Shown here: in pieces, positions 6,401-31,230 of the stretch
Position numbering within the stretch: position 1 is the stretch's first letter
Layout: every line of letters begins with the position of its first letter
NCBI GenBank assembly: GCA_002794465.1
Contig: MTSL01000190.1
Location: 20,124 to 52,123, forward strand
Direction of reading: 5' to 3'
DNA from: Paramicrosporidium saccamoebae KSL3
Taxonomy: Eukaryota; Fungi; Cryptomycota
DNA: 32,000 nucleotides
Program-made: the position numbers and the translations under genes
The notes under the pieces: model-generated
What the model was told of the DNA's origin: nothing
What the model saw: only the letters and a program-made list of their open reading frames with translations
The model's database searches: none

Positions 6401-6818
6401 TGAATTCAGCGAAGCAACCGTCTTTGTGGACCCGTGTCGCTCCTTTGTCCTGCCCGCCGTCATCTGTCCCGGCTGCAATCACACCCGCGATCTTGATTTC
6501 TGTCGGGATGTCGATGTACTCGCCGCCATGTCCCGTCCCGTCCATTCCTTTTCCTGTTCCTGTGGTCGTCTCTATGATTTGGTCGAGATAGAGGCAGAGA
6601 TTGTGGCTGTCCTGGCTGAGGAGGCTGAACGATATCAAAGACAGGATCTGACGTGTTCGTGCGGCGTGGTGGCAGAGTTGATGGGATGCAAGTGTGCCGG
6701 AAAATACCGACTAGAGGGCTTGGATGCGATGGAGCGGGTGCGTGTGGTCACTCGGGTGGCCAGGGCGCTTGATCTGCAGTCCCTGTCCGCATACATTTCA
6801 AGCAACTATAATCTGTAA
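486..6818 (+). CDS. POL2: DNA polymerase epsilon catalytic subunit, ~2088 aa; exons 486-662, 697-822, 855-6818
   Basis: Exo motif FDIETSKMPLKFPD; Pol motif A LIYHLDVGSMYPNII; motif C LELDTDG; CysX CAVCDFNRPGKQC...CQREN; C-terminal CysA/CysB fingers. Introns 663-696 (GT-AG) and 823-854 (GC-AG) join the ORFs at 486, 703 and 873 in frame. Confidence 0.98.
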
Positions 6819-9269: not shown

Positions 9270-10814
9270 ATGGAACGGCGGTGGCAATTCATTCTTACAC
9301 AATTCGTCCTGCCATTTCTGGTGGGAGTGGGGATTGCCGTGGTTATAGTAACATGGCGGACGAACGTCCCTCGGCACGATGATGAACCGGCCATGATGGC
9401 ACAGCCGTCAATGATTATTGAGCCAATGGCCCAATTCGAAGAGCTCAAAGTGGAGGAGGATCAGCAAATTGCAGCCGAACCAAAGATTGAGGAGGAGCCT
9501 GGACCAGCCGAGTTTACGCCAATGAACACACCTCCTAAGCCCGACGATGCGGCGAAACGAAAACTGCGCGCAGAGCGAGCCGCCAAGGGCAGCTGGACCT
9601 GCCGACACCGCTCCACCAAGTGGCTTGAACAAAACTCGCAGTATCTCCCATCCGAGTTACGTGAATATCTCCAACGGTACAACCGACTTCATGACAAGTC
9701 GCTGAAAGAGTTGTCAGTCGAAGAGGCTTTTCAGACCAGCCTGACGAGTGTCAAAAATAATGTGCGATATATAGTATGGCGGCCGGTAGGAGAGGATTTG
9801 GCGGGACAGATTCTTAGTCTCACCTCTGCCTTCCTGCTAGCATTACTGACCGATCGAATCTTGCTCATCAATCTTCCCTATGTAAGACTATTCTTCTGCG
9901 AGCCATTCACGCGCTCCTCCTGGATCTTTCCCCAGAAACACCTGGCAGATTTAAATAATTTCACAGTGATGCGAAACGCCTTGCAGACGCGCACTTTACT
10001 GCGGGTTACGCGTCTCAAGCTCAAAGACGGATTCCAGGATGACGACTCGATCTTTCTAACTTGCAATGGAAACCTCAAGACGATGATAGCGCATTCCCAA
10101 ATCCTACTGGTCGAGTCACCAGTTGGATTTGTGGAATTATTAGCTGCAAATCCGTCTCATCGTAACCGTCTCAACCACCTGTTCCAGGATCGTCCTATCT
10201 ACACTCTTCTCATGCACCATTTGCTGCACCCATCAAACGACATGTGGTTCCGGATTATTGACACATATCATGTGCACTACACTAATGATGTTGAGCGTCC
10301 CTCCCGTCTCGGTGTCCATTTGCCCGTTGTTGGAACTGACGCGGTTGAATCCTTCAAACTCCGCCACAAGATGCAATGCGCCCTCCGGAAGCATATCGAC
10401 TTGCCGACCACACAGGGCCGCATTATCTACTACAGTCCCTCAGGGCCGACCAACGACCCCCGATTGTGGGCAAAGAGACAGCTGAGTATTCCGATGGGAT
10501 ACAAATTGGTGACGTCAACAGCAGAGAATTCCAAAAAGGGCTACCTGGGCGACTGGCGACGGCTCCTCACAGATATATGGATGGGTAGTTGGACGCATGT
10601 ATTTGTGATAGGCGAAATGACTCAGGCGGCACTGGCGACGCATTACTACCGGGCAAAGGAGTCGTGGGTACTGGAGCAACAAGCCGAGGGAGAGGATTGC
10701 AACTATGTTGCAATGTCGTCTGCATACCTACTGCCAGTGCCTGAAAATTTGACTGATTGTCCAGCCTTTCGGCAAGAATGGCGTGCCAAATACAAAAAAG
10801 TCAAATCTCAATAA
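9270..10814 (+). CDS. Type II membrane glycosyltransferase resembling plant xyloglucan fucosyltransferases (GT37), 514 aa
   Basis: N-terminal TM plus a Pro/Glu-rich stem. PSELREYLQRYNRLH, RYIVW...ILSLTSAFLLALLTDRILL, FCEPF..SW..P and HLLHPSNDMW match recalled FUT1-family blocks (KYVVW...RILSLASVFLYALLTDRVLL, FCEPF, YLFHPTNQVW). Confidence 0.75.
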   Translation: MERRWQFILTQFVLPFLVGVGIAVVIVTWRTNVPRHDDEPAMMAQPSMIIEPMAQFEELKVEEDQQIAAEPKIEEEPGPAEFTPMNTPPKPDDAAKRKLRAERAAKGSWTCRHRSTKWLEQNSQYLPSELREYLQRYNRLHDKSLKELSVEEAFQTSLTSVKNNVRYIVWRPVGEDLAGQILSLTSAFLLALLTDRILLINLPYVRLFFCEPFTRSSWIFPQKHLADLNNFTVMRNALQTRTLLRVTRLKLKDGFQDDDSIFLTCNGNLKTMIAHSQILLVESPVGFVELLAANPSHRNRLNHLFQDRPIYTLLMHHLLHPSNDMWFRIIDTYHVHYTNDVERPSRLGVHLPVVGTDAVESFKLRHKMQCALRKHIDLPTTQGRIIYYSPSGPTNDPRLWAKRQLSIPMGYKLVTSTAENSKKGYLGDWRRLLTDIWMGSWTHVFVIGEMTQAALATHYYRAKESWVLEQQAEGEDCNYVAMSSAYLLPVPENLTDCPAFRQEWRAKYKKVKSQ

Positions 10815-11342: not shown

Positions 11343-13184
11343 ATGAACAGTTCAACAGACGAATTCTATGAATCCAGCCGTCGTGCCGTTGCCGTCCTGC
11401 TGCTCTTCTGGCTTTCTTATGTGCTTGCCTACACCATAATGGCCTGGGTCATTCTCCCATCGCGGCCGTATAATCCATTGTCTCGGAAGCGACGTTCGAA
11501 TTTGTCGCGACTCATGCTGTTGGGGCGACCGGAGCGGAGACCGCGCTCACTGCCCCCCGCCAGGACAAATAGACACTTGAGGACGGCTAGTCTGCGGGAC
11601 ATTGCAGAAAGTGAAGGAGACCACAGTCTTTGTGATGTGGACAGTCTCTCGCGAGCCAGTGACACTGACGCTGGTTGGGGAGATGAGTTTCGAGTGTCTT
11701 CGGGAAGCGTGGAGGCATTATCGAGTCGTCACATTTTGTCCTCGTTTGCACCGGAATACACTGCCGCTGTCTGCGGCTTGGCGGTGGTGATTCAGGGCAT
11801 CTTGTTGGTGCCGGCTAGTTTGGCAGTGTTGGCAGTGGTGGATGGAATGCCCGAGGCACAGCGGCTTTTCCATGGAATATTGCTTCGATGGTGGCATTGG
11901 GCCTGGAATGCTGCATTGATTCTTATATTTGCAGCATTACCAGTGTCATCAGCTTGGATAGAAGGTCGTGGTCGGAGAGACGCACCGATTCTAAAGAAAC
12001 TCTCTATACTGTGCTACCGACTCGTTGATGGAATTTCCCGATGGGGTCTTCTAAAGCCTCTGCTCCTCGGCATCGCCATGATATTTTTTTACCTGCTGGC
12101 AGTTCTTTTGGGCTTTTTCAGTCCCATCAACTTGAACGAATGGGCCATCATCCTGAACATTGCCTGTATAGGCACAATATCACTTGCTAGTTTGGTTTGT
12201 ATCCCATTGGGAGTGTCAACCATCTTTCGCAATATCTTGGCCCTTGATGTTGTTCCTGGAGGCTACCGTGAAGCTACGGATCAGCTGGTCGAGTTGAAAG
12301 AATTGAAGGAGCAAATATTGTCCATTGAGACTACACTTGCTCCCCAAGGTACGCTGCGAAGAAATGCGTCCATGCCAATGGAACTCACCCCCGTCTCGTC
12401 AAAATCGCTTCGGTCCAAGCTGATAGAATTGCGATCTAGGTCGTCCGAGCTGCAAAGTCAGCTCCCATATGGTAGTAGATCAGGATGGCGAAGAATGGGG
12501 GTTGCGCTACTTGTCTTTATAATTAGTCTTTCCTTGGCGTTCGCTATTTATGTCGAGGTCCGCTGCTTTATCCAGTTTATTGTTACTAATCTGCTTTGGT
12601 ATATACCAGGTGTCCAACTTGTGGATCGTCTATTGTACCAGCTGGCCTTGCTTGTTGGTCTTGTTCATGTTCCTAGCGTCGAGACTCGGCCGAAAAGGAT
12701 AGACGTCTACTCATTGATCATTTCCGCCTGGATGAGCCTGATGCTTATGACTGTGCTGTTCATTGGGTTACGACGGCTCGTGAGACGTCGCCTCAAGAGT
12801 GTGCACATAATCACTGCACAGTTTTCGTTGCCCAGACGGACATTGGACAAGTTTATAGCTCCACTGATGATTGGGTTGGCTTCTACGATTCTCTTTGTTC
12901 CACTGCTTTCCTTGTCGGGAGCGACGGATTACATTGACTCTCAGATTACTGCTGGGGACCGGATTAACAGCTATGTTTCACCTCTGGCCAGCGTATTCCC
13001 TCCGCCATTACGGAACCTCTTTGGTGCCTTGCATCATGTCGTGTTTCTGAGATTTCCCCTGCTCGTCTGGCTGATCATGGCGTATCGAGGGTTATTGATT
13101 CTGGTCCTGGTGGGAGTCGGTACTCGATCCGTCCGTGCCAGCATCCAACTGCTTGTCGACAAGTCCAAGTCACATATAGAATAG
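11343..13184 (+). CDS. LMBR1/LIMR-family multi-pass membrane protein, 613 aa
   Basis: FYESSRRAVAVLLLF..Y, AVCGLAVVIQGILLVPASL and WNAALILIFAALPVSSAWIEG parallel recalled LMBR1 blocks. Central coiled-coil loop between TM bundles. Confidence 0.65.
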   Translation: MNSSTDEFYESSRRAVAVLLLFWLSYVLAYTIMAWVILPSRPYNPLSRKRRSNLSRLMLLGRPERRPRSLPPARTNRHLRTASLRDIAESEGDHSLCDVDSLSRASDTDAGWGDEFRVSSGSVEALSSRHILSSFAPEYTAAVCGLAVVIQGILLVPASLAVLAVVDGMPEAQRLFHGILLRWWHWAWNAALILIFAALPVSSAWIEGRGRRDAPILKKLSILCYRLVDGISRWGLLKPLLLGIAMIFFYLLAVLLGFFSPINLNEWAIILNIACIGTISLASLVCIPLGVSTIFRNILALDVVPGGYREATDQLVELKELKEQILSIETTLAPQGTLRRNASMPMELTPVSSKSLRSKLIELRSRSSELQSQLPYGSRSGWRRMGVALLVFIISLSLAFAIYVEVRCFIQFIVTNLLWYIPGVQLVDRLLYQLALLVGLVHVPSVETRPKRIDVYSLIISAWMSLMLMTVLFIGLRRLVRRRLKSVHIITAQFSLPRRTLDKFIAPLMIGLASTILFVPLLSLSGATDYIDSQITAGDRINSYVSPLASVFPPPLRNLFGALHHVVFLRFPLLVWLIMAYRGLLILVLVGVGTRSVRASIQLLVDKSKSHIE

Positions 13185-13330: not shown

Positions 13331-15075
13331 CTATTTTGTTATGGAAAGACTTCCAAATTTGGAATTCCAGTCAAGATAAAGATCCAGATCGGCAGTGGAG
13401 ACGCTGGCACGCACTTGAGTCATGGCATCTCGGAAATCGTGAATCAAAATGGATCTGACCTGATCGGCTGCTACCTCCATAATGTTCTCGATGCTCCGAA
13501 TGGGTCCCAGCGCAGCCTCGCGACACAGATTGTCTACATCTGCGCCTGAATAGCCGTCCGTCTTGGTGCATATTTCCTCCATATGTTCATTGCTTAGCTC
13601 ATGGCGTTGGGAGGCCAGCAGAGTCTGGACAATAGTGAGACGGGCCGGCGCGTCAGGAAGTGGAATGTATAATCGCTTGACCAATCGTCGCCGTGCTGCC
13701 TCGTCCAGTTCCTGTGGTCGATTAGTGGCACCAATGACCAAAATTCGATCAGCATCTGAGGTGGCCGCTCCATCGAATTGGACAAGAAATTCCGTCTTGA
13801 TGCGACGCGATGCTTCAAATTCGCCATCGGTGCGCTGTGTCAGTAACGAATCGATTTCGTCAATGAAAATGACACTCGGCTGCATTGCCCGAGCACAGGC
13901 AAATAATGCCCGCACCAACTTTTCGCCCTCTCCCACCCATTTGGATGTTAGGGATGAGGCGCTGATGCTGAAAAAAGTGGCCTTTGCCTGACTTGCTATG
14001 CACTTTCCAATCATTGTTTTACCGGTTCCTGGTGGGCCGAATAGCAAAAGTCCCTTTGGAGGACCGCGCAGTCCCACGAAAATGTCGGGACGGAGCATGG
14101 GCCAAATAACAATCTCTTTGATTGTCGTTTTGGCATGTTCAAGACCGGCAATCTGCGACCAGGTGACCGTGTCCACGCGATGGATAATTTCGTTCTGAAT
14201 TGTCTCCAACAATTTTGGATCAATACTTCGCAGACGTGGATCAACGTCACTATCAGCGGGCTCAGTTGGCTCTGGCGGTTTTGGAGGCTCCACCCGGACA
14301 CGCTTACTGAGCCCCACCGGCTTCTTGGGCGCTGAAGAGGCCGTTTTTGCTGCGGGAGCAAGCCGTCCCATCTATATACATCAGTTATCCATTGACAATA
14401 CCATTTGGCCTGCAGTCTGAAAATCATTTCGACCACTTGATGGCGCAGAAGTGTTTGAGGAGGGAGCATTTTCCTTGATCGAAGCAGGAGTACTGTCCCT
14501 AGACATGGTGGGTGCATTATCCCTCACTGAAGCAGAAAGGGTCTCTCTTGACGGAACTGAAAAATTCCTCAAATTCCTCAGACTACTCGAGTTACTCGGA
14601 TTACTCGGATTATTCGGATTACTCGGATTACTCAAACTATTCACAGCTCTTGAACTACCCACATGACTCATAGATTTTGGCTCAATCACTTCGGGCTTTA
14701 GCAGATTTTGATAATATGCATTCAGCTGCCCTATACAGGCGGGAGTATCTGGATGTATCTATTGTCAAGACGTGACGCATTATTTACCAAGCTCTCAATC
14801 GAATCAAATGACTCTCCAACGTCGGGCGCAACACTAGAGCGGTTCTCAAGCGACAACACCTTCATCAGTGCATCCTCCAGTGTCCATTCTGTGGCAGCAC
14901 AGAGATTGTCATCTGCGCATAAAAGTAGACTTTGTTGTATCAAAGCCTCTAATGATTCTGGAGCGCATTTGTCTGTCCAACCATCCAACGAAAAGTCGAG
15001 ACCATTCTCTGTATCAATGCGGTCCTGGTTGGCTTCCAGCTCTGCATACACTGCCCTCCTATACTGTTCCTCCAT
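13331..15075 (-). CDS. FIGNL1: Fidgetin-like 1 AAA ATPase, ~561 aa; exons 15075-14788, 14758-14402, 14371-13331
   Basis: [55 protein letters not shown] is typical of FIGNL1; Walker B IFIDEID. Introns 14787-14759 (29 nt) and 14401-14372 (30 nt) keep frame. Confidence 0.92.
14584..14633. repeat. 9-bp coding minisatellite (TACTCGGAT x5.5) encoding NPS/NPN repeats in the FIGNL1 linker
   Basis: Units start at 14584, 14593, 14602, 14611 and 14620. Confidence 0.9.
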
Positions 15076-15272: not shown

Positions 15273-15613
15273 TTAGTTAAACTTGCGTCTGAACTGGGTT
15301 CCATCAACAAGACGGGCCTTTCCACCGGTGGGGTGGCACAGAACCTGGTTGCAGCTCGGGCAGGCAACTACAGTCTGGGCGTGGCTGAATACGGTCGTGA
15401 TATTGAAGCATCCTTGGCACTTGACATCCATAAAGTACGAGTTCGGGCCCTGCACCAGGCGCTTCTTCTTGTGGGTGGTCTTGACCGTCGCGGGAAGCGG
15501 GTTCAACAAATCCACAACAAGCTAAGCGGTTAGAAACTGTATTATGGGGGAAACGGGAGCGCAGAGGCCGCGGTTAGATGGATGGAAGGGTGGGGAACGG
15601 TACTTACAGTCAT
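15273..15613 (-). CDS. RPS27: 40S ribosomal protein S27 (eS27), 84 aa; exons 15613-15608, 15521-15273
   Basis: DLLNP...[20 protein letters not shown]...C..C zinc finger. ATG ACT|GTAAGT...CTAACCGCTTAG|CTT gives [10 protein letters not shown]. Confidence 0.97.
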
Positions 15614-15645
15614 GGTCACTGAGAGGACCCTGGTCGCGGAGCTAG

Positions 15646-17146
15646 ATGAACCTGAGCTGGAGACAGTTGCTGCTGTGCGGCACCGTGGTGGCTGCGACAG
15701 GCATAATAGGATATCGTCTATTGACGACCGCTCAAGTGCATGCAGAGAAGAAGGTAAAAGAAGTCAAGACTGCGGGAAAGGCTCATAAAAAAGTCAAGCG
15801 TCGTGCCAAACCAGAAGCCACTGGGGGGGAGACGTTGCCCGATGGGTTAGGTGACATGCTGGGAAAGTGCGAGCTTTCAGTCCCTGAACTGCTCAACCTT
15901 TCTCCCGAGGAAAAGCAAAATGTATTCTACGCTTTGCTAATGAGAGGGGAAATGGTCATGTCAAAGGGTCCTGCCGAGGTGGAAAAGGCCTTGGACTACT
16001 TTTCCAAAGCCGTATCGATAGTTCCTAATCCTGGTGAGGTTGTCGCTGCATTTGAAAATACTCTCCCACGGCCCATCTTCAATGCGCTTTTAGACAGGAT
16101 TCAGCGCGACATTCAAGTAAAGGTTGGAGAATACTTTGCTGGACTGCTCCCAACAGATAGCAAGGCTACTTTTGCAGAGACGCTGATAGCCGAGCCGGGA
16201 GCTGAACATCCCTCAAAGGTATGGGTTCCTAATGCCACCGACGATGTAAGTGTTGGGACGACTCTTTGGGAGGAACATGCAGACGTGGTTGCCCTCAATG
16301 TGGAGGCAAAAGGCGAGCACTGTGAGCATTGTTTAAGGAGCTTGCATGGGACCCACGTCGGATGTCCTGCCTGTGACCAACCACTCTACTGCTCTCAGCC
16401 CTGTCAGATCAAGTCGGCTGAAGTATACCATGCGTACTTTTGCAAGGCACCAAACGCAGTATACAGCGCCATGAATGAGCTGCGCCAAGTCTGCAAGGAA
16501 AATCAGTCATCACTTGCTTTGCTCGTGTTGCGATATGTTGCCTTCCTGCTGAGCGAGGAACTACGTGGCAATGGAGCTGCCAACAACGGCCCATTTGCCC
16601 ATTATGACCATTTGCGACCAGTGTTCAGAGCACCAAATGACATTGATCGCACCGAGGCCAAAATATTACGAGAGATTTTTTCATCCACGAACAAGAACAT
16701 TGTTGAATGTACCCGACCTGGGATGGCAGCTAATTCTGTAGTTTTAAGCGATGATATTTACACTTCAATGAAGGCAACTATTGCCAGATGTGTCATGTCC
16801 AGTTCAACTGACGATGCACTTTCTCATATGGTATACTCCCTACGGTAAATTCACGTTTTAGGAGTGTCGCAATCTGAACGATTCTCTCCAAGCATTATCC
16901 TTTTTCCACGTCTCCGCCCACATACCGCATTCTTGTGATCCTAACGCTATGGCTATTCGCCCCGTTGCTGGTAGTCTGCGAGTTGCAGCTCTTAAGAATA
17001 TTTCCAATGGCGAAAAGTTGACCATGTCATATTTGCCATTCGCCGAGGGCACTTCCACTGCCGAGCGACAGCTGCACCTGATGCGCATATTTGGAATCCA
17101 CTGCCAGTGCAAATTGTGCACGGACGATCTTCCCATCCCAGCTTAG
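15646..17146 (+). CDS. Tom20/MAS20 receptor domain fused to an SMYD-type split SET-MYND domain, ~478 aa; probable introns 16709-16741 and 16831-16861
   Basis: N-terminal TM, a basic linker and Tom20-like helices (EEKQNVFYALLMRGEMVM...ALDYFSKAVSIVPNPGEVVAAFENTLPRPIFNALL). MYND finger CEHC...CPAC...YCSQPC...H...C. After splicing: PHSCDPN, GEKLTMSY and post-SET CQCKLC. Confidence 0.85.
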
Positions 17147-17162
17147 TGAATGCAACAATAAA

Positions 17163-17228
17163 TTCTTGTAGAAAGAACATGGTATTCTTGTAGAAAGAAC
17201 ATGGTATTACTGTAGAAAGAACATGTCC
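17163..17228. repeat. 22-bp tandem repeat x3 (TTCTTGTAGAAAGAACATGGTA) immediately upstream of RPC1
   Basis: Units start at 17163, 17185 and 17207; the first two are identical. Confidence 0.95.
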
Positions 17229-17253
17229 ACGGCTTCCGGGGTGGGTGGTGAAG

Positions 17254-20200
17254 ATGGGCAAGGAGCTTTTGAAGCTCGACACGGCCCCCAAGCGAATCAA
17301 ACACATTCAATTCGGGACACTGACCCCGCCGGAAATCGATGAAGTGTCAGAGGTGGAGGTGGTCAATCGAGAGCTGTACAGCATTCTGGACCGCGTCCCC
17401 ATCAAGCACGGGGCTCTCGACCGACGTCTCGGGACGTCCGAGAAGAACTCGACCTGTGAAACATGCGGTGGCAAGCTATCAGACTGTGCTGGTCATTTCG
17501 GCAATGTCAAGCTGGCCCTACCCGTCTTTCACATTGGCTTTTTCAAGGCTTCTCTGCAGATTCTTCAAGACATTTGCAAGACTTGTGCCAGGATCCTGCT
17601 GACCGAGGAGGAGCGCTCATCCTACCTGAAGAGAATCAGGATGCCCAAGCTGGACAGTCTACAGAGGCTGGCGGTGGTAAAGGCAGTGCATGATAGATGT
17701 CGAAAGACGGCCAACTGTCATTCATGCGGTGCGCTTAATGGACTAATCAAAAAGGTTGGCATTATGAAGGTTGTGCATGAAAAATATCGGTCGGTACGGA
17801 AGCAACATGGGGACGCTGAATTGTTCAAACGACAATTTTCCCATGCTATCGAGTCCAATCCTGAGCTCAAGATGCATGTGGGCAAGGCACAGGAGGATGT
17901 GAATCCGCTCAAAGCACTGGAGTTGTTTACTCGCGTGACGGCAGAGGATTGTGAGCTGCTTGGCTTGGACCCAACATATGCCCATCCAAGGACGTTCATG
18001 TGGACGTGCGTTCCAGTGCCCCCGTCGTGCATCCGTCCCTCTGTGGCCATGTCGGTGGAGAATGGTAGCAACGAGGATGATTTAACTGTCAAGATGACTG
18101 AGATTGTCTACACCAACATGATCATCAAGGACGCAATTGAAAAGGGTGCCCCAGTGCACATGCTTATGGAGGACTGGGATTTCCTGCAACTTCAATGTGC
18201 CATGTACATTAATTCCGAGCTACCAGGTATTGCAAATGCGCTACAAGTGACGGGAAAGCCGATTCGAGGCCTTTGCCAAAGGCTAAAGGGAAAGATGGGC
18301 CGTTTCCGAGGGAATTTATCGGGAAAGCGTGTGGATTTTAGCAGTCGGACAGTCATCTCGCCCGATCCCAATCTCGCCATTGATCAAGTGGCTGTGCCAG
18401 TGTACGTGGCCAAGACGCTGACATATCCCGAAGTGGTCACGCGATTCAATTTGGAGCTGCTGCGACAGGCAGTGCTCAATGGCCCCGATCAGCATCCTGG
18501 TGCCAATTTTATCCAAAGCGAGGGAACGGCTGGATTGAAACGATACCTCAGGTTTGGAGATCGCAAAAAGATTGCGCGGGAGATGCGGGTGGGAGATATT
18601 GTGGAACGTCATTTGCGTGATGGAGACGTAGTGCTCTTCAATCGCCAGCCTTCCCTGCACAAATTGAGTATTATGGCGCATTTTGCCGTGGTCAAGCCAT
18701 GGCGTACCTTTCGTTTCAACGAGTGTGCCTGCACTCCCTACAATGCGGATTTTGATGGAGACGAAATGAATTTGCATTTGCCACAGACTGAAGAGGCTCG
18801 TGCCGAGGCGATTCATTTGATGGGGATCAAACACAATTTGGTGACGCCCCGGAACGGTCAGCCGCTTATTGCGGCCATGCAGGATTTTATTACGGCGTCC
18901 CATCTGATCAGTAATCGCGATGTGTTCTACGACCGCGCCGAGTTTGCACAATGCTGCATGATGATGTGTGATGCGGCATTACGGGTAGATCTCCCACCGC
19001 CTACCATCCTCAAACCGGTAGTTCGATGGACAGGCAAGCAGGTGGTAGGAATCCTAATGAGACCAAATCACAATACCAATGTGATGGTCAATCTCGAATT
19101 GAAGACTCGCACCATGACCAAGGTTCCTGAAGGCACCGCCCTGGAAATGTGCCCCAATGACGGATATATGTTGATTCGGAACAGTGAATTGCTTTGCGGC
19201 ACGCTGGACAAGGCAAGCGTTGGTGGAGACAGCAAGGGGAGCATCTTTTATGTGCTGATGCGAGACTACGGGGTGGACTATTCCATTGGATGCATGTCCC
19301 GACTGGCCAAGTTGTGTGCTCGCTGGTTGGGGAACCGTGGCTTCTCCATCGGCATCAATGACGTGCAACCAGATATTGCGTTGCAACAGCAAAAGGAGAA
19401 ACTTGTCAAAAAGGGCTATGCCGACTGTGACGACAACATTGCCGAGTTTCGGATGGGAAGGCTGCAATGTCAGCCAGGATGTAGTGCAGAACAGACATTA
19501 GAGGCCGTGATTTCGGGGATTCTCAGCAAGATCCGCGACGACGTGGGTCAGATCTGTTTGCAAGAGTTGAGTAGACACAATGCTCCATTGATTATGCAGT
19601 GGTGCGGCAGTAAGGGTAGCAAAATTAATGTTTCTCAAATGGTCGCCTGTGTGGGACAACAGATTATTTCGGGCTCACGTATCCCCGACGGCTTTGAAGA
19701 TCGTTCCCTACCTCATTTCCCAAAACACTCCAAGACGCCCGCGGCCAAGGGTTTCGTCAAGAATAGCTTTTACTCGGGTCTCACTCCCACCGAGTTTTTC
19801 TTCCATGCCGTCTCGGGTCGAGAAGGTCTTGTGGACACTGCTGTCAAGACTGCAGAGACAGGTTACATGCAGCGTCGTCTGATGAAGGCGCTGGAGGATC
19901 TGTCCACCAGCTATGACATGTCAGTGCGAAACTCGACGGGAGGAATGGTGCAATTTTGTTATGGAGACGATGGATTGGACCCGGCCTGTATGGAGGGCGA
20001 CGGTGCACCGGTCAATTTTGTGCGAAATCTCATGCACTCTCGGGCGATACTTACCAAGACGACCCAATCCCTCACCGTCCCAGAAATTAAGAATCAATTG
20101 GCGGCCCGACTGGGAGCGGATGAGTTTAACCTGTGCACTGACGGATTCAAAACCTCTTTGAGCGAATTTGTAGAGAAGACGATTGTATCAAAGACTGAGA

Positions 20201-21429
20201 AGCTTTCTGCAAAATACGGCCACATCCATGGCGGGGCATTGCTTGACAATATGACCAACCTCACCATGGACCACTTGAACAAGTTTCTGGATATTTGTCT
20301 GGAAAAGTACATGCGAGCTCGTATGGAGCCAGGAACTGCAGTGGGAGCACTAGGAGCGCAGAGCATCGGAGAACCCGGCACTCAGATGACCCTAAAGACT
20401 TTTCATTTTGCCGGTGTTGCTAGCATGAATGTCACCCTGGGAGTGCCCCGCATTAAGGAGATTATTAATGCGGCCAAGGTCATCTCTACGCCCATCATTA
20501 CAGCCAGTCTGGCAAATGCAGAGAGTATCCCATCGGCGCGAATAGTCAAGGGTCGGATTGAAAAGACACTGTTGGGCGACATTGCCGAGTTTATTGAAGA
20601 GGTTTACCAGCATGACGGCTGCTATCTGGGAGTAAAGCTGGACTTGAAGGCAATTCAGGCTTTGCAGCTGGAAATTGATGTGGACACGGTGCAACGGGCC
20701 ATAGTAAAGGCGCCCAAGCTAAAGATGCACGAGCAGCAAGTGCGGGTGCAACATCCCGACCGCATCCGCGTCTATCTGTCGTCGGGGAAGAAGGATGATA
20801 CATCAACTTCGCCATACTTTGGACTGCAGCAGCTGAAGCGTCAGTTGCCCGATGTCGTAGTCAAGGGCTTTACAACGGTGAGTCGAGCGGTTATCAATGA
20901 CGTGCAAGGTAATGGGTCACGATACAATCTGCTAGTGGAAGGGTACGGCTTGGCTCAAGTAATGACCACAGAAGGTGTGGTGGGCACTCAGACAACCAGC
21001 AACCACGTGATGGAGGTGCAGGCTGTGTTGGGGATTGAGGCGGCGCGTCAGACCATTGCTAATGAGATTCAATACACTATGAGCAAGCACGGCATGACCA
21101 TTGATAATCGCCATGTCATGTTATTGGCGGACATTATGTCGTTCCGGGGCGAGGTATTGGGAATTACGCGTTTCGGCATTGCCAAGATGAAGGACTCGGT
21201 GCTAATGTTGGCGTCATTTGAAAAGACCACGGACCATTTGTTTGATGCAGCGCGGTTCAGCAAACGCGACGACATTGACGGTGTCAGTGAGTGCATCATC
21301 ATGGGCAGTCCCATGCCGATTGGCACGGGAATGTTTAAGCTGCTACAACGAGTGGATCGGCCCCGGATAATGCCCGTTAAGCCGCTACTCTTTGACCGGA
21401 CCGAATACCATCCTAAATGGAATCCATAG
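17254..21429 (+). CDS. RPC1: RNA polymerase III largest subunit, ~1391 aa, intronless
   Basis: Catalytic TPYNADFDGDEMNLH, GRFRGNLSGKRVDFS, GEPGTQMTLKTFHFAG and GEVLGITRFGIAKMKDSVLMLASFEKT (Pol III type). No heptad CTD. First ATG is at 17254; the ORF-track start at 17245 is a GTG. Confidence 0.97.
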   Translation: MGKELLKLDTAPKRIKHIQFGTLTPPEIDEVSEVEVVNRELYSILDRVPIKHGALDRRLGTSEKNSTCETCGGKLSDCAGHFGNVKLALPVFHIGFFKASLQILQDICKTCARILLTEEERSSYLKRIRMPKLDSLQRLAVVKAVHDRCRKTANCHSCGALNGLIKKVGIMKVVHEKYRSVRKQHGDAELFKRQFSHAIESNPELKMHVGKAQEDVNPLKALELFTRVTAEDCELLGLDPTYAHPRTFMWTCVPVPPSCIRPSVAMSVENGSNEDDLTVKMTEIVYTNMIIKDAIEKGAPVHMLMEDWDFLQLQCAMYINSELPGIANALQVTGKPIRGLCQRLKGKMGRFRGNLSGKRVDFSSRTVISPDPNLAIDQVAVPVYVAKTLTYPEVVTRFNLELLRQAVLNGPDQHPGANFIQSEGTAGLKRYLRFGDRKKIAREMRVGDIVERHLRDGDVVLFNRQPSLHKLSIMAHFAVVKPWRTFRFNECACTPYNADFDGDEMNLHLPQTEEARAEAIHLMGIKHNLVTPRNGQPLIAAMQDFITASHLISNRDVFYDRAEFAQCCMMMCDAALRVDLPPPTILKPVVRWTGKQVVGILMRPNHNTNVMVNLELKTRTMTKVPEGTALEMCPNDGYMLIRNSELLCGTLDKASVGGDSKGSIFYVLMRDYGVDYSIGCMSRLAKLCARWLGNRGFSIGINDVQPDIALQQQKEKLVKKGYADCDDNIAEFRMGRLQCQPGCSAEQTLEAVISGILSKIRDDVGQICLQELSRHNAPLIMQWCGSKGSKINVSQMVACVGQQIISGSRIPDGFEDRSLPHFPKHSKTPAAKGFVKNSFYSGLTPTEFFFHAVSGREGLVDTAVKTAETGYMQRRLMKALEDLSTSYDMSVRNSTGGMVQFCYGDDGLDPACMEGDGAPVNFVRNLMHSRAILTKTTQSLTVPEIKNQLAARLGADEFNLCTDGFKTSLSEFVEKTIVSKTEKLSAKYGHIHGGALLDNMTNLTMDHLNKFLDICLEKYMRARMEPGTAVGALGAQSIGEPGTQMTLKTFHFAGVASMNVTLGVPRIKEIINAAKVISTPIITASLANAESIPSARIVKGRIEKTLLGDIAEFIEEVYQHDGCYLGVKLDLKAIQALQLEIDVDTVQRAIVKAPKLKMHEQQVRVQHPDRIRVYLSSGKKDDTSTSPYFGLQQLKRQLPDVVVKGFTTVSRAVINDVQGNGSRYNLLVEGYGLAQVMTTEGVVGTQTTSNHVMEVQAVLGIEAARQTIANEIQYTMSKHGMTIDNRHVMLLADIMSFRGEVLGITRFGIAKMKDSVLMLASFEKTTDHLFDAARFSKRDDIDGVSECIIMGSPMPIGTGMFKLLQRVDRPRIMPVKPLLFDRTEYHPKWNP

Positions 21430-22000: not shown

Positions 22001-23494
22001 TTACGGGGTCAGGACCAATTTGCGGTCAGGGTGGGCAAAGGCGAGCCAGACAATCACTCCGATAACGTAATGGAAGGCAGCAGCCAGGAAGACCAAGGCC
22101 CAACTTCCGGTCCATTTCAAGATCAGACCAGTAACTTGCACTCCCACAATGCCAGTCAGGGTTGCGGCAGTGTTGCCCAGACCAAAGATGACACCGGCGT
22201 ATTCGGGATTGATGTCAAAGTGGGCGACAGAGAGACCAACGTTGCTGAGCGAGTTGAGACCAAGGGCCAGCGTAATAAAGATGACACCCTGCGTAATGTT
22301 CTTGGCCACAAAACCGGCCATCAACATGAAAAAGGCGGCTCCCAAGAGGGCAATGGTTTGGCTGCCCTTGCGGATCCACACAAGCGGCACTTTGAGTCGA
22401 TAAACCATCCAATCAGCGACAAAACCCACTGCCAAGCCCACTGTAAACTGCACACAGTACGGCACAATGGAAATGAGACCCAAATCGGCAAGATCTACCC
22501 CAAACTCCTGGCGATAATAGGTGGGCAACCATTGCAGTAGCACAAAGAAGCCCCAGCAGTTGCAGTATTGGTTGACCAAGATGGCCCAAGTGTACTTGTT
22601 GCGCAAGATGCGTTTCCAAGGAACAGGACGACGCTTCAGGGGTGGCTCGTTGGCGTCGTGTTGTTGTTCCTTGGTGGGAGAGCCATTGAGGGCGGGATCA
22701 GGTGGCACAGTGTTCATCTCCAACTGATGCTTTCCAGGGACGGTGGAATCGGGCGGAAGAGCCACGGCAGGATGTGATCGGATCAACAGTAACCAGGGGA
22801 GCATCCAGACAATCCCGACCCCACCAAAGATGTAGAACACCCACGGCCAGCCGATTGTGGACGATGCGGCCATGGGAGCTGAAATGAGCAAAGCCATAAT
22901 GGCCCCGGCGTAGCTGAACGAATTGACTGCAGCTGTGGCTCGACTCCGTTCTCCAATGGGAAGCCATTTCCCCAACAACGAGTTGATCGCAGGATAGCTC
23001 ACTCCCTCTGCAATGCCCAGAAACACGCGACACACAATCAGCGCTGCAAAATGCCACCGGGCTGCAAACGGAGTAATCAGAGTGAACACACTCCAGCCCA
23101 ATGCACCGGCTGCAAAGACGTATTTGCCTCCAAAGCGGTCAGCCACATATCCACCCAGGATCTGCGTGGCCATGTAGCCGTAGAAGAAGCAGGAGAAGAT
23201 GGCTCCCTCAATGGCGGGGTCCCAACCAAACTCCTTACTCATGGGGATAATGGCAATGGCAATGTTGGACCGATCCGCATATGAAATCGACAGCCCCAAA
23301 CAGCTCAGCACTACCAATACGACACGACGGGGCACTCCGCAGATGGTGCCCTGCAGACGCGCTGCCTCCTTTTGCAGATTGTTAATTGCCACCGAGGGCG
23401 AGACGGGCGGGCTTTGCGAGGCAGACTGCGTCACATTCGGAATGTGCTCGTTAGAGTCCTTCAGGACCATAGTGTACAGTGTGTTGTGATCCAT
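22001..23494 (-). CDS. MFS anion:cation symporter of SLC17/PHT4 type, 497 aa
   Basis: ISYADRSNIAIAIIPM, FFYGYMATQILGGYVADRFGGK, RVFLGIAEGVSYP and WLPTYY; about 12 hydrophobic segments. Confidence 0.9.
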   Translation of the reverse strand: MDHNTLYTMVLKDSNEHIPNVTQSASQSPPVSPSVAINNLQKEAARLQGTICGVPRRVVLVVLSCLGLSISYADRSNIAIAIIPMSKEFGWDPAIEGAIFSCFFYGYMATQILGGYVADRFGGKYVFAAGALGWSVFTLITPFAARWHFAALIVCRVFLGIAEGVSYPAINSLLGKWLPIGERSRATAAVNSFSYAGAIMALLISAPMAASSTIGWPWVFYIFGGVGIVWMLPWLLLIRSHPAVALPPDSTVPGKHQLEMNTVPPDPALNGSPTKEQQHDANEPPLKRRPVPWKRILRNKYTWAILVNQYCNCWGFFVLLQWLPTYYRQEFGVDLADLGLISIVPYCVQFTVGLAVGFVADWMVYRLKVPLVWIRKGSQTIALLGAAFFMLMAGFVAKNITQGVIFITLALGLNSLSNVGLSVAHFDINPEYAGVIFGLGNTAATLTGIVGVQVTGLILKWTGSWALVFLAAAFHYVIGVIVWLAFAHPDRKLVLTP

Positions 23495-26312: not shown

Positions 26313-27690
26313 TTATCCCTCTTGTCCAAAGTCGGCAGTAAATTTGACGTGTTCAGCAATGTCCTTGTCGCTGACTGTCGGTCGTGTTGTTTGCAGCGAC
26401 TTGAGAAAGTCAGCCAGGCCCAGATCCGGCTCTAGCAGCTCATCGCCCTCCACATCCGTCCAGTGCTTCTCGATAGCCCCCGCGTCCCCAGGCGAACAGG
26501 GTGTTAGATATCGTCTTGTCCGCTTTGGATCAGCACGATCCGGTCCTTCAACTTGCTTGAAATGCGTCGCCCCCTGCACCTTTCGTACTGGCTGCATCAG
26601 TGCATCCCGCACCACTGTAGCAATATCCGCACCTGAATAGCGTTCCGTGCATTGACCGAGTTGTTTATAATCCTCCGGACGCAATAGACAGGGCGTGTTC
26701 TTAATATGGATCTGGAACATCCGGGATCGGGCCGGGGCTTCGGGCAAGGGAATGTAGATGCGTTTCTCAAAACGACGTCGAATCGCCGAATCTAATGCCC
26801 ACGGCAAGTTGGTGGCGCCCAGGATGAGAATTCCCGTAACGTCATTCCCCACCCCATTCATCTGCACCAAAAATTCCGTCTTGATGCGACGTGACGCCTC
26901 ACTCTCGCCTTCTCCACGTGCACCGCACATTGAATCGATTTCGTCAATGAAGATGATGCAGGGTCGATTCTTGCGGGCCAACTCGAACATTTGCTTCACC
27001 AGCTTTTCCGATTCGCCCATCCACTTACTGACCAAATCTGCTGATGAGATGGACATGAACGTCGATTGCGCCTCTGTCGCCACCGCCTTGGCCAAATACG
27101 ACTTTCCTGTTCCCGGTGGACCATATAGCAAAATTCCACGCCATGGGGTGCGTTGGCCCGTGAATAAATGCGGGAATTTAATGGGAAGAATCACTGCCTC
27201 CTTCAACGCCTCCTTAGCGCCCTCCAATCCCGCAATGTCGTCCCAACGCACATTTGGCTTTTCCGTCAGGATGGCCTGCGACAGGGTGCTCTGCATCTTT
27301 GCATTCTCCTCATCCCTATAGTGTCAATCTTTGAACCCATTATATACTTGCTATCCCCTCCTCCTCCTCCTCCCCCGCCTCCACCGCCAGAAGCGGCTGC
27401 CTTCTTTTTGGGCGGGTTCGTCTTTCCTTCATCTATGGCCGTCTTGAGTTTTTCCATCCTGTCCAAATACTCGGCCACCTTTTTCCTAATAGTCTCCTTC
27501 ACCTTGTCATTTTTCTCGTATTTGACAGCAGTCATGAAATGCTCCACGCCAGAGTCGTACAGTCGGTATGCTGATTCATAATTTCCCGCAGAGTCCTCCT
27601 CGGTGGCCTGTTTTGTAAGCGAAATTGCCTTCTACAATCGACATTAACCCTGTCATGGATGCTTACCTGAAAAAACTCGGAATGGCTCAT
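26313..27690 (-). CDS. VPS4: VPS4 AAA ATPase, 436 aa; exons 27690-27667, 27631-27348, 27315-26313
   Basis: MIT domain ([25 protein letters not shown]), [31 protein letters not shown] and a beta domain with LTPCSPGD. Introns of 35 and 32 nt. Poly-Gly linker of about 11 residues. Confidence 0.97.
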
Positions 27691-29555: not shown

Positions 29556-31230
29556 ATGCTAACCACCAACCACGACGCTGGGCGTCCTCTCTCCAACCAT
29601 GGTAGTTCCATGGAGCGACTGACCTGTAGACCGGTGCGAGCCACCCTATCCGCTGTGTGATGACCCCGCCTATACGCTTACTCGTCCCCCCGCACCCCGC
29701 CCACCGCCTCGTACTGTTTCAGACTTTTCGGGCTTTGAATCGTTCCTGGCCACGCTGGGACTGGTCCCACCTCAAAGTCCACATGTCGCCAAACTAAACA
29801 ATCTATTGGCAGTGGTGGAGGGACATCCTGAGCGTCGCGCCTTGCGTCAACTGCTGGCGGATGCGCAGCCTAGACAGTCCAAATGGTTTGATCCGGGGAG
29901 ATCGGGCCAGGCCGAGCTGTATGATGCTCTTGAGAGAATACTGCTGCAATTGAAGAACACGGTGCCCCATTCGTTGCCCTTTCTGCAGCGTGTAAATAGG
30001 AAAGAAGTGCCCGATTATTTCGACGGTCACATTACTGGACTGCGCTGATTGTGTAGTGGTGAAAAAGCCCATGGATCTGGGAACAATGTATAAAAAGATG
30101 AAGACTTTTTCATACATTAACAAGACGCAATTTCTGTCGGATTTGGAGCTAATGTACGATAATTGCTATCTGTATAACTCTGAGCCTGTAAATTGCAATC
30201 TCTAGGCTCATTGTGATAGGAAAGTCCGTTTCGGAACCACGTGAATATTCTAAAAGACCGATGGACAACACTCTTGCAGGCTGTGCCTGATATTGTGGTG
30301 GGTGGCGGGTTGAAAGATGAAATGGACACTTTGCTGAACGACCATCTGAGTCGGCTGAGCGAAGATGATTCCTCGGCTGGCTCAATTGCCAGTACATCGC
30401 ATCACAGTCTGCCCCAGCCGACTCCTTTGAAGAATCAGACTGAAGTGGGGTTGCACGAGCTGGAATTGCCGATCCCCAGGAGAAGTGCGGTAGGAATGGG
30501 TGGATACCATCGAAGTCGCAGTAATCCCGAAACAATGCACTTTCATCAATCCTTTCCTGATTGCATTCCGCCAATACTCTCCAGGAGGGTGGAAAAGACT
30601 ATAGTCAATGTTCCGCTTGATAAGGATATATACGAACAGTGTGACTTGTTGCGGCAGGTTAGAGCCGCAACAAATGGAACTGCTCTTACTGCATCTCCCC
30701 CACCAAACATACGAAGCTATTCCTCTGGCAATGTGTACACTCCTCGTCTTGGTGATGCGGTTCTATTGCCGGCGCTGGGATGGCTGCTGCTGCAAGCCGG
30801 ATTCCAGTCTTTTAACCCCGCCGCCGCCTCCCTCCTCTCTGACCTCACGAGCCATTTTATCCTAGAAATGCTGCAGTCCCTTAAACTGTTTATAGAGTGC
30901 ACCACATCTGACGCCATCACCCTCAACCTCGCTCTTGCTTCGCATCTTCTCGCTGATCACACCCGTCGCAGAGCCAAAACTCTTCTCCGGTACGTTCAGG
31001 ACCAACCCGTGCACATCCGACGTCTTACCAAGGCGCTATCGTTGGTTAAGCAGCGGAAGGAGCCATCGGAGCCGAGCGAGTCGATGATTGTGGATGAAGA
31101 GGTGGATCTGGAGCTGCTGGGCGATCCAGCGGGATGGGTGCCTGCCAAGAGACCTCTTGCAGAGTCCGAGGGGGAGGAGGCCTCGCTTCAGGAGCTTCTC
31201 AATGATAACTTTGTACCATCCGAGAGATAG
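29556..31230 (+). CDS. SPT7: SAGA subunit Spt7-like (bromodomain + histone-fold), ~527 aa; exons 29556-29601, 29630-30025, 30057-30187, 30220-31230; 5' end uncertain
   Basis: GQAELYDALERILLQLKNTVPHSLPFLQRVNRKEVPDYFDVVKKPMDLGTM...DNCYLYNS is an Spt7-type bromodomain. LLLQAGFQSFNPAAASLLSDLTSHFI is a histone-fold. Introns of 28, 31 and 32 nt keep frame. Confidence 0.85.

What the first reader, a model, noticed from the sequence alone, without database searches (positions are those of the whole stretch)
15646..17146. Tom20 import-receptor domain fused to a non-canonical SMYD (SET-MYND) domain: a possible mitochondria-tethered lysine methyltransferase or pseudo-enzyme
Seen: one open reading frame carries an N-terminal TM anchor, Tom20-like TPR helices and a complete MYND finger. 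One frame-restoring 31-nt intron adds the C-SET and post-SET cysteines. Established: Tom20 is normally a small receptor facing the cytosol, and SMYD proteins are soluble methyltransferases with GxG, NHSC and a catalytic Tyr. Here the Tyr (KLTMSY) and post-SET CxCxxC are kept, NHSC reads PHSC, and no GxG motif is visible. The Tom20 YFDxKRR motif after the TM is also missing. Inference: the protein could methylate or bind presequence-bearing precursors, nascent chains or ribosomes at the TOM complex. I recall similar MAS20+SET architectures in annotations of some other fungi, so the fusion may be conserved but functionally uncharacterised.
Basis: partly seen in the sequence, partly recalled or inferred. 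Interest (0 to 1): 0.75.

Follow-up and report, generated by a model that had tools for sequence, protein, structure and literature searches.

The report
Tom20–SMYD fusion gene, Paramicrosporidium
This is a real three-exon gene of the amoeba parasite Paramicrosporidium saccamoebae that joins a membrane-anchored Tom20 mitochondrial import-receptor domain to a SET/MYND domain; it is a divergent, publicly mis-annotated member of a fungal family that has been catalogued but never studied functionally.

Summary
Window 15646-17146 (+) encodes one 478-aa protein. It has an N-terminal membrane anchor, a basic linker, a Tom20 core (Pfam MAS20 42.6 bits, cut-off 27), a complete MYND finger and a split SET domain with post-SET cysteines. 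A relative has introns at both positions, and there read-through is impossible.

The window is Paramicrosporidium saccamoebae (Rozellomycota). Its public gene model is chimeric. It skips the C-SET exon and splices into the downstream RNA polymerase III gene.

The architecture is not new. It is "Group 25" of a 2022 survey of fungal SET proteins (88 genes, none in Ascomycota). That survey listed none for this species. At least 75 representative clusters carry the fusion, from chytrids to mushrooms.

The Tom20 presequence groove is conserved. The SMYD3 cofactor and lysine-channel side chains are mostly replaced, and the family as a whole lacks the NHSC asparagine. The module is therefore probably non-catalytic or weakly catalytic.

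Verdict: a new, divergent member of a known but uncharacterised kind. Interest is moderate. Whether it is this organism's only Tom20 is unresolved.

The parts
15646..16708 (+). Exon 1 (aa 1-354 plus 1 nt): start codon, anchor, linker, Tom20 core, N-SET, MYND, most of I-SET
   Evidence: ORF list. The N-terminus MNLSWRQLLL matches MNLSWKQ(V/L)LL of relatives P0005, P0006 and P0008.
15667..15723 (+). Single moderately hydrophobic segment (aa 8-26, LLLCGTVVAATGIIGYRLL): predicted N-terminal signal-anchor
   Evidence: This is the only 19-residue window with Kyte-Doolittle mean above 1.6 (value 1.79).
15727..15825 (+). Basic linker (aa 28-60; 11 K/R against 3 D/E); the canonical YFDxKRR motif is absent
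15829..16140 (+). Tom20 core domain (aa 62-165; TPR-like helices forming the presequence groove)
   Evidence: Pfam MAS20 42.6 bits, model positions 54-131. PDB Tom20 hits from E 2.6e-8 to 1e-5, with groove residues conserved in character.
16213..16320 (+). N-SET strands (aa 190-225); the GxG position reads K-V-W-V
   Evidence: hhalign and hmmsearch alignments to SMYD3 residues 17 onward; motif census.
16321..16443 (+). MYND zinc finger (aa 226-266): C226, C229, C240, C243, C249, C253, H262, C266
   Evidence: All eight ligands are invariant in the clade. Pfam zf-MYND scores 18.8 bits here and 27.4 in P0007.
16444..16830 (+). I-SET helical insert (aa 267-384) with the family-specific GPFxHYDHL motif; interrupted by intron 1
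   Evidence: Invariant columns. An I-SET HMM built from this clade hits family members with canonical Tom20 N-termini (e.g. P0034, P0038, P0044), but no hit that has N-SET and C-SET and lacks the Tom20 core is I-SET-negative in fewer than 34 cases, i.e. most generic SMYD-like hits are missed.
16709..16741 (+).
   Evidence: Homologs lack the 11 residues. A 40-nt intron with a stop codon sits at the same position in L008.
16742..16830 (+). Exon 2 (aa 355-384)
16831..16861 (+). Intron 2: 31 nt, phase 0, GTATAC...TTTTAG
   Evidence: The junction LSHM|ECRNL matches LSRIECRQV and relatives. A 74-nt intron sits at the same position in L008.
16862..17146 (+). Exon 3 (aa 385-478 plus stop): C-SET (PHSC at 406-409, Tyr441) and post-SET C465-x-C467-x2-C470
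   Evidence: Pfam SET 26.8 bits; SMYD3 alignment.
17157..17162 (+). AATAAA, a polyadenylation-like signal 10 nt after the stop codon
   Evidence: A similar AATAAA follows the stop codon in L008.

Best explanation
The locus is one three-exon gene of Paramicrosporidium saccamoebae encoding a 478-aa protein. That protein is a divergent Rozellomycota member of the fungal 'Group 25' Tom20-SET family.

Most likely mechanism, which is inferred rather than shown: the moderately hydrophobic N-terminal helix and the basic flank insert the protein as a signal-anchor into the mitochondrial outer membrane, leaving the rest in the cytosol. The Tom20 core binds the hydrophobic face of presequences at or beside the TOM complex. 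The SMYD-like module (N-SET, MYND, I-SET, C-SET, post-SET, with no C-terminal TPR-like lobe) serves mainly as a zinc-stabilised protein-binding or regulatory module with lost or weak methyltransferase activity.

Shown here: the gene structure, the domain identities, the family membership, the conservation of both halves, and which active-site residues are kept or replaced.

Inferred: localisation, presequence binding, and lack of catalysis.
For: - **Organism:** the neighbouring RPC1 ORF is 100% identical to an NCBI protein of P. saccamoebae.
- **Gene model:** both junctions are matched by homologs. Both intron positions are conserved in L008, with different lengths and a stop codon in one. P0007 carries the whole architecture in one ORF.
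- **Domains:** Pfam MAS20 and SET score above their cut-offs. The family profile matches SMYD3 at E 3e-28, hhalign gives 99.6% probability, and Foldseek's top hits are SMYD3 and SMYD2 at E 4e-11.
- **Family:** 75 of the top 150 representative clusters carry both a Tom20 core and a C-SET. Named members come from Basidiobolus, Podila, Piptocephalis, Hysterangium, Coniferiporia, Entophlyctis and Ambispora. The architecture is published as Group 25.
- **Lineage of the Tom20 core:** the window clade's core scores 14-36 bits (30 for the window protein) higher against an HMM of fused-type cores than against an HMM of stand-alone Tom20.
- **Anchor:** there is one hydrophobic segment followed by a segment with 11 K/R.
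- **Groove residues (human numbering):** Q67=Q, F70=F, L71->Y, I74->L, L81->M, V99->I, L106->V, V109->A, L110->F.
- **Constraint on both halves:** identity across the clade is similar for the Tom20 core (41-78%), the I-SET (36-71%) and the C-SET (31-67%).
- **Weakened catalysis, window protein:** N205->P406, F259->I463, D262->Q466, Y124->F317, N181->C371 and F183->M373. In SMYD3, F183A abolishes activity, F259A and N132A almost completely abolish it, and Y124A and D262A substantially impair it (PMC3105404).
- **Weakened catalysis, whole family:** the NHSC Asn is present in only 6 of 75 members, and the catalytic Tyr is F or W in 24 of 75. Y239F abolishes SMYD3 activity.
Against: - There is no localisation, binding or enzymatic data for any member of the family.
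- The window protein keeps Tyr441, His407, Ser408 and all four zinc ligands of the post-SET site. The F->M and F->I changes are hydrophobic and could still form a pocket, so residual or altered catalysis is not excluded.
- The juxtamembrane YFDxKRR motif, present in most family members and in canonical Tom20, is lost here. The MAS20 score is only 42.6 bits, against 130-150 bits in the three other family members scanned, which have canonical N-termini. Docking to TOM may therefore be altered.
- I could not determine whether the genome also has a stand-alone Tom20.
- The I-SET alignment to SMYD3 (Y124, N132) is of low confidence.
Confidence: 0.6

Rival explanations
1. It is an active lysine methyltransferase tethered to the mitochondrial surface. 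The Tom20 domain would capture presequence-bearing precursors, chaperones or TOM subunits, and the SET domain would methylate them during or before import.
For: The catalytic Tyr441, His407-Ser408-Cys409, Pro-Asn and the post-SET CxCxxC are all kept. The SET half is as conserved across the clade as the Tom20 half. The linker between the two domains is conserved, which suggests one functional unit. The Y257F change seen here retains more than half of SMYD3 activity.
Against: Most side chains that hold the cofactor or form the lysine channel in SMYD3 are replaced, including N205, F259, D262, Y124 and F183. There is no GxG. The C-terminal lobe that SMYD3 needs for activity is absent. One third of family members have F or W at the catalytic Tyr position.
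Confidence: 0.27
2. It is a paralog that no longer works in import. A separate canonical Tom20 would serve the TOM complex, and this protein would use a repurposed TPR-like Tom20 fold plus the SMYD module as an outer-membrane scaffold for something else.
For: Stand-alone Tom20 proteins of 160-230 aa are present in phyla that also have Group 25 genes. One example is Dacryopinax, with a 230-aa Tom20 and one Group 25 gene. The window clade has lost the YFDxKRR motif and has a weak MAS20 score.
Against: The hydrophobic groove residues are conserved in character. The genome is strongly reduced (3750 protein models; four SET genes listed for the species in the survey), so retaining a functionless paralog is less likely. 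No second Tom20 from this species appeared in the visible top 120 of 245 hits, but that list was truncated.
Confidence: 0.2
3. The public gene model is right: the Tom20-like N-terminus is spliced onto RNA polymerase III subunit RPC1, and the C-SET exon is non-coding.
For: NCBI protein P0161 (1806 aa) has exactly this structure, and both the donor (16831) and the acceptor (just before 17194) are GT..AG.
Against: The skipped segment encodes a C-SET and post-SET that is 31-67% identical to relatives. Relatives call RPC1 as a separate gene downstream. An AATAAA follows the stop codon. The acceptor lies inside a 22-nt tandem repeat. A membrane-anchored RPC1 is biologically implausible.
Confidence: 0.02

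Closest known systems
Fungal 'Group 25' SET-domain proteins (MAS20 upstream of SET; J Fungi 2022, PMC9692433)
   Same: The order of domains in one polypeptide is the same: anchor, Tom20 core, N-SET, MYND, I-SET, C-SET, post-SET. Members share the family-specific I-SET and the non-canonical active site, with the NHSC Asn mostly absent.
   Different: The window clade (Paramicrosporidium and uncultured relatives) lacks the YFDxKRR juxtamembrane motif. It has a much weaker MAS20 score (42.6 bits against 130-150). It has also lost the N181 and F183 equivalents that many other members keep. The survey listed no Group 25 gene for this species.
Canonical Tom20 (yeast, Neurospora, human; PDB 1OM2, 7VC9, 9I7S)
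   Same: Both have an N-terminal signal-anchor, a basic flank, and a TPR-like core with a hydrophobic presequence groove and the TLP(P/x)P(V/I)F helix.
   Different: Canonical Tom20 is 145-230 aa and ends shortly after the core. Here about 310 further residues of SMYD-type domain follow, and the YFDxKRR motif is missing.
Human SMYD3 and SMYD2 (split SET with MYND lysine methyltransferases)
   Same: The fold and domain order from N-SET to post-SET are the same, and so are the zinc ligands, the HSCxPN motif and the catalytic Tyr.
   Different: There is no C-terminal TPR-like lobe and no GxG. The cofactor and lysine-channel side chains N205, F259, D262, Y124, N181 and F183 are replaced. The protein is membrane-anchored through a Tom20 domain rather than soluble.
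Yeast Ctm1, the cytosolic SET-domain enzyme that trimethylates apocytochrome c before import (from my own knowledge; not tested here)
   Same: It is a conceptual precedent for lysine methylation of a mitochondrial precursor on the cytosolic side.
   Different: It belongs to a different SET subfamily, has no MYND finger, no Tom20 domain and no membrane anchor. No homology was tested.

Membership tests
Tom20 / MAS20 (PF02064) | Pfam MAS20 score above the gathering threshold | tested here: met
   42.6 bits against a cut-off of 27, but covering only model positions 54-131.
Tom20 / MAS20 (PF02064) | Single N-terminal transmembrane signal-anchor with a positively charged C-terminal flank | tested here: met
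   Residues 8-26 have a Kyte-Doolittle mean of 1.79. Residues 28-60 contain 11 K/R against 3 D/E. This is a prediction only.
Tom20 / MAS20 (PF02064) | Juxtamembrane YFDxKRR(N/S)DP motif | tested here: not met
   The motif is absent in the window protein and in its whole clade. It is present in most other fused members.
Tom20 / MAS20 (PF02064) | Hydrophobic presequence-binding groove | tested here: met
   Aligned to human Tom20: Q67=Q, F70=F, L71->Y, I74->L, L81->M, V99->I, L106->V, V109->A, L110->F. The list of groove residues comes from my own knowledge of the 1OM2 work.
Tom20 / MAS20 (PF02064) | Mitochondrial outer-membrane localisation and association with Tom40/Tom22 | not testable with these tools
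   No localisation or interaction data are available.
SMYD (SET and MYND domain) methyltransferases | SET domain split by a MYND finger, followed by a post-SET CxCxxC | tested here: met
   hhalign to SMYD3 residues 17-271 gives 99.6% probability and E 6e-25. Pfam SET scores 26.8 bits against a cut-off of 22.4. All eight MYND ligands are invariant. The Pfam zf-MYND score itself is below its cut-off (18.8 against 22.7).
SMYD (SET and MYND domain) methyltransferases | Cofactor-binding motifs GxG and NH(S)C with Asn | tested here: not met
   The GxG position reads K-V-W-V. The NHSC motif reads PHSC. Asn is present in only 6 of 75 family members.
SMYD (SET and MYND domain) methyltransferases | Catalytic tyrosine (SMYD3 Tyr239) | tested here: met
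   Tyr441 is present in the window protein. Across the family the position is Y in 51, F in 17 and W in 7 members.
SMYD (SET and MYND domain) methyltransferases | C-terminal TPR-like lobe that closes the substrate pocket (SMYD1-3) | tested here: not met
   The protein ends 8 residues after the last post-SET cysteine.
SMYD (SET and MYND domain) methyltransferases | SAM-dependent lysine methyltransferase activity | not testable with these tools
   This needs biochemistry.
Fungal Group 25 MAS20-SET proteins | A MAS20 domain upstream of a SET domain in one polypeptide, with a shared family-specific I-SET | tested here: met
   The ORF is continuous from the anchor to the I-SET. The family profile search returned 81 clusters at E<=1e-30. 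In total 75 clusters carry both a Tom20 core and a C-SET, and 50 hit all four regional HMMs.
Fungal Group 25 MAS20-SET proteins | A Tom20 core of the fused-type lineage rather than the stand-alone Tom20 lineage | tested here: met
   The window core scores 75.7 bits against the fused-type HMM and 45.7 bits against the stand-alone HMM. All 12 clade members show the same direction. The taxon composition of the two training sets could bias this comparison.

The most novel reading that the evidence does not exclude
In Paramicrosporidium, and perhaps in Mortierellomycotina, Zoopagomycota and chytrids, the Tom20-SMYD fusion is the only Tom20. Presequence recognition would then be physically coupled to an active lysine methyltransferase that marks precursors, chaperones or TOM subunits at the point of entry. 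That would be a co-import modification step unknown in yeast and animals. The stand-alone Tom20 of Dikarya and Mucorales would be a later, domain-stripped derivative.
Probability: 0.1. Interest if true: 0.8.

Novelty: new member of a known kind. Interest (0 to 1): 0.45.

Why it matters
Tom20 is the textbook presequence receptor, and it has been studied almost only in Ascomycota and animals, where it is a small stand-alone protein. In many other fungal lineages a full Tom20 is fused to a SMYD-type domain, and nobody has tested what that does.

This window adds three things. First, the family reaches into Rozellomycota, the reduced parasites next to Microsporidia, where the gene survives strong genome reduction. 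Second, the public record of this gene is a chimera with RPC1, which hid it from the one published survey. Third, a residue census suggests that the family's SET domain has drifted away from canonical catalysis.

If the fusion proves to be the sole Tom20 in some lineages, it would change the picture of how the fungal TOM receptor evolved.

Tried and rejected
- **First protein search too narrow.** The word-indexed search found only 11 relatives, all unnamed, and made the family look tiny. The exhaustive profile search corrected this.
- The representative search turned it away, so the profile and the structure model were built on P0007 and relatives instead.
- **Search for a second Tom20 inconclusive.** A MAS20-only profile search returned 245 hits but listed only 120. 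None was from this species, and even the query's own full-length members were missing from the list. Absence therefore cannot be concluded.
- **Literature searches.** The combinations Tom20 + SET domain + MYND, Tom20 + SMYD, Tom20 + Paramicrosporidium and Tom20 + Rozella returned nothing relevant, and a search for the assembly and run accessions of the relative P0007 found no paper. The genome paper does not discuss TOM or introns.
- **Rfam.** The scan of the window found nothing.
- **Technical failure.** MAFFT --auto on 75 sequences timed out, and I reran it with a faster mode.
- **Two separate genes (Tom20-like, then SET): rejected.** There is no stop codon between the Tom20 core and the MYND/I-SET region, and P0007 has everything in a single ORF.
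- **Retention of the 33-nt in-frame segment as coding: rejected.** Homologs lack it, and the same position is an unreadable intron in L008.
- **N132 equivalent not assigned.** The I-SET alignment to SMYD3 is too uncertain.
Full report
**What is in the sequence**

An ATG at 15646 opens a 400-codon ORF that ends at a TAA at 16846-16848.

The segment 16709-16741 (33 nt, GTACCC...CTAAT...TGTAG) is in frame and free of stop codons, so it reads through silently. However, seven homologs read ...N(I/V/M)(V/A/Q/L)(E/D)FL(S/T/K)D(D/E/Q)(I/V)Y... across this point and lack the 11 residues CTRPGMAANSV.

In a relative (L008, protein P0006) the homologous position holds a 40-nt GT..AG intron that contains a stop codon and is not a multiple of three. 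Both are followed by sequence encoding FLSDEIY... and ...FFHISAHMPHSCDPN...CQCDLC.

The gene is therefore three exons: 15646-16708, 16742-16830 and 16862-17146. It encodes 478 aa.

The fusion itself does not rest on any intron. The anchor, the Tom20 core, the MYND finger and the I-SET share one ORF in the window. In relative P0007 all domains lie in a single 528-codon ORF.

**Domains**

Pfam results on the 478-aa protein:

| Pfam family | Score (bits) | Gathering cut-off | Region matched |
|---|---|---|---|
| MAS20 | 42.6 | 27 | residues 62-149, model positions 54-131 |
| SET | 26.8 | 22.4 | C-SET |
| zf-MYND | 18.8 | 22.7 | below cut-off |

Although zf-MYND is below its cut-off, the eight zinc ligands are all present and invariant in the clade. 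They are C226, C229, C240, C243, C249, C253, H262 and C266. P0007 scores 27.4 bits for zf-MYND.

PDB sequence searches hit fungal and mammalian Tom20 as well as SMYD2 and SMYD3. A profile of the family's SET half hits SMYD3 at E 3e-28. It aligns to SMYD3 residues 17-271 with 99.6% hhalign probability. An AlphaFold model of P0007 has mean pLDDT 63.9, with 74-92 over most of the Tom20 core. Foldseek finds SMYD3 and SMYD2 as its best structural matches, at E about 4e-11.

The only strongly hydrophobic segment is residues 8-26. It is followed by a stretch with 11 K/R against 3 D/E. That is the pattern of outer-membrane signal-anchors such as Tom20; the comparison rests on established knowledge.

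The protein ends eight residues after the post-SET CxCxxC. The C-terminal TPR-like lobe of SMYD1-3 is therefore absent.

**Organism and public annotation**

The downstream ORF (17254-21426) is 100% identical to an NCBI protein of Paramicrosporidium saccamoebae (Rozellomycota). That NCBI entry, P0161, is 1806 aa long and carries MAS20 plus RNA-polymerase domains.

Its first 395 residues are the window ORF, including the retained 33-nt intron. It then jumps from the donor at 16831 to an exon starting at 17194 and continues into RPC1. The public model is therefore a chimera that deletes the C-SET and post-SET exon. Four observations argue against it:
- The skipped exon is conserved in relatives.
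- An AATAAA lies 10 nt after the stop codon.
- The acceptor lies inside a 22-nt tandem repeat.
- Relatives call RPC1 as a separate gene.

**Family**

The first word-indexed search found 11 unnamed environmental relatives. An exhaustive profile search found 81 representative clusters at E<=1e-30. Local regional HMMs show that 75 of the top 150 carry both a Tom20 core and a C-SET.

Named members come from seven genera across five fungal groups:
- Zoopagomycota: Basidiobolus ranarum (annotated 'mitochondrial import receptor subunit tom20'; Entomophthoromycotina) and Piptocephalis tieghemiana.
- Mortierellomycotina: Podila epigama.
- Basidiomycota: Hysterangium and Coniferiporia.
- Chytridiomycota: Entophlyctis helioformis.
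- Glomeromycotina: Ambispora gerdemannii.

Most of these have a fully canonical Tom20 N-terminus (anchor plus YFDYKRRNDPxFRKKL), and the three scanned score 130-150 bits for MAS20. The Paramicrosporidium clade has lost that motif.

The architecture is already published. A 2022 survey of SET proteins in 229 fungi defines 'Group 25' as SET proteins with MAS20 upstream: 88 genes, none in Ascomycota, function unstudied. Its Table S1 lists only Groups 1, 4 and 5 for P. saccamoebae. This is the expected consequence of the chimeric model. I found no functional paper on the fusion.

The gene order RPS27e(-), Tom20-SET(+), RPC1(+) is seen in L001, and Tom20-SET followed by RPC1 holds in all five relatives' loci examined, down to 30% protein identity.

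**Is the Tom20 half functional?**

Aligned to human Tom20, the groove positions keep their character: Q67=Q, F70=F, L71->Y, I74->L, L81->M, V99->I, L106->V, V109->A and L110->F. The TLPxPIF helix is also kept. The list of groove residues comes from my own knowledge of the rat Tom20-presequence structure.

Across the clade the Tom20 core is 41-78% identical. This is similar to the I-SET (36-71%) and the C-SET (31-67%), so both halves are under constraint.

The core scores 14-36 bits higher (30 bits for the window protein) against an HMM of fused-type cores than against an HMM of stand-alone Tom20. It therefore belongs to the same ancient fusion lineage.

Stand-alone Tom20 proteins of 160-230 aa exist in Basidiomycota and Mucorales, phyla that also have Group 25 genes. 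One example is Dacryopinax. In those lineages the fusion is a paralog. Whether Paramicrosporidium has a second Tom20 could not be determined (the hit list was truncated).

**Is the SET half catalytic?**

The roles of SMYD3 residues are taken from PMC3105404:
- Phe259 stacks on the adenine; F259A almost completely abolishes activity.
- The Asn205 side chain and the main chain of Arg14 and Asn16 hold the homocysteine amine.
- The Tyr124 hydroxyl holds the carboxylate.
- Asn132 holds the ribose.
- Asp262 braces Arg14.
- Phe183, Asn181, Tyr239 and Tyr257 form the lysine channel.
- F183A and Y239F abolish activity, whereas Y257F keeps more than half.
- The C-terminal TPR domain is needed for activity.

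The window equivalents from the hhalign and hmmsearch alignments:

| SMYD3 residue | Window residue |
|---|---|
| R14-G15-N16-G17 | K191-V192-W193-V194 |
| Y124 | F317 (low-confidence region) |
| N181 | C371 |
| F183 | M373 |
| N205 | P406 |
| H206 | H407 (kept) |
| Y239 | Y441 (kept) |
| Y257 | F461 |
| F259 | I463 |
| D262 | Q466 |

Its numbering agrees with the paper at every residue named.

Counts across the 75 family members:
- The NHSC Asn is present in 6.
- The following His is present in 66, and the Cys in 62.
- The catalytic position is Y in 51, F in 17 and W in 7.
- The post-SET cysteines are present in 61-62.

The zinc scaffold and the fold are thus strictly kept, while the cofactor-binding and catalytic side chains are not. 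This points to a module whose conserved role is structural or binding. Residual or altered catalysis in the window protein, which keeps Tyr441, is not excluded.

**Conclusion**

It is a divergent Rozellomycota member of a known but functionally unexplored fungal family, and it is hidden in the public record by a chimeric gene model. The best mechanistic reading is an outer-membrane, Tom20-type presequence receptor carrying a probably non-catalytic SMYD-like binding module. I give this about 0.6 overall: about 0.9 for identity and gene model, and about 0.5 for the mechanism.

The main rivals are an active TOM-tethered methyltransferase (about 0.27) and a paralog that has left the import pathway (about 0.2). 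These two overlap in part with the main reading.

Noticed in passing
window 15646-21429: The NCBI protein for this locus (P0161, 1806 aa, named 'DNA-directed RNA polymerase subunit', P. saccamoebae) is a chimera. It consists of the first 395 residues of the Tom20-SET ORF, then a false 363-nt intron (16831-17193), then RPC1. This explains why a published survey lists no MAS20-SET gene for the species.
   Followed up: yes
window 17162-17225: A 22-nt unit (ATTCTTGTAGAAAGAACATGGT) is repeated 2.9 times in the 107-nt spacer between the Tom20-SET stop codon and the RPC1 start codon. Its 15-nt core occurs three times there and nowhere else in the window. It could be a promoter or terminator element, and the false acceptor of the public model lies in copy 2.
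   Followed up: partly
window 15273-15646: RPS27e lies on the minus strand: exon 1 at 15613-15608, an 86-nt intron, and exon 2 at 15521-15273. Its start codon is only 32 nt from the Tom20-SET start codon on the other strand, so the two genes share a very small divergent promoter. An RPS27e gene is also called upstream on the minus strand in L001.
   Followed up: partly
window 16709-16741 and 16831-16861; L008 1533-1572 and 1665-1738: The introns here are unusually short (31 and 33 nt). The RPS27e intron next door is 86 nt, and the homologous introns in a relative are 40 and 74 nt. Some relatives (P0001-P0003, P0007) have no intron at one or both positions.
   Followed up: partly
window 9270-10814; also L003 and L004 1-1210: An ORF matches Pfam XG_FTase (xyloglucan fucosyltransferase, 91 bits), a family best known from plants. 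It is present here and in a related environmental contig. This is unexpected in a reduced intranuclear parasite of amoebae.
   Followed up: no
window 873-29330: The neighbourhood is ordinary compact housekeeping: DNA polymerase epsilon (873-6818), an AAA ATPase (13331-14371, minus strand), RPC1, an MFS transporter (22001-23494, minus strand), an FKBP, TMEM33/Pom33, Vps4 (26313-27296, minus strand) and an SRP72-like TPR protein. ORFs 11343-13184 (613 aa) and 30241-31230 (329 aa) have no Pfam match.
   Followed up: partly
family members P0034, P0040, P0044, P0074 (not in the window): Several fused Tom20-SET proteins with canonical N-termini (Basidiobolus, Piptocephalis and others) carry an additional tail of 150-280 residues after the post-SET. 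In the two sequences inspected (P0034, P0044) the tail is strongly acidic and low in complexity. The Paramicrosporidium clade lacks it.
   Followed up: no
one search hit list (not in the window): Among the top 120 Tom20-region hits, stand-alone Tom20 proteins came from Ascomycota, Basidiomycota and Mucorales. Hits from Mortierellomycotina and Kickxellomycotina were all truncated 'partial' proteins; the longest (Podila, 318 aa) also carries a MYND finger. This hints that the fusion may be the only Tom20 in those lineages. The list was incomplete, so this is only a lead.
   Followed up: no
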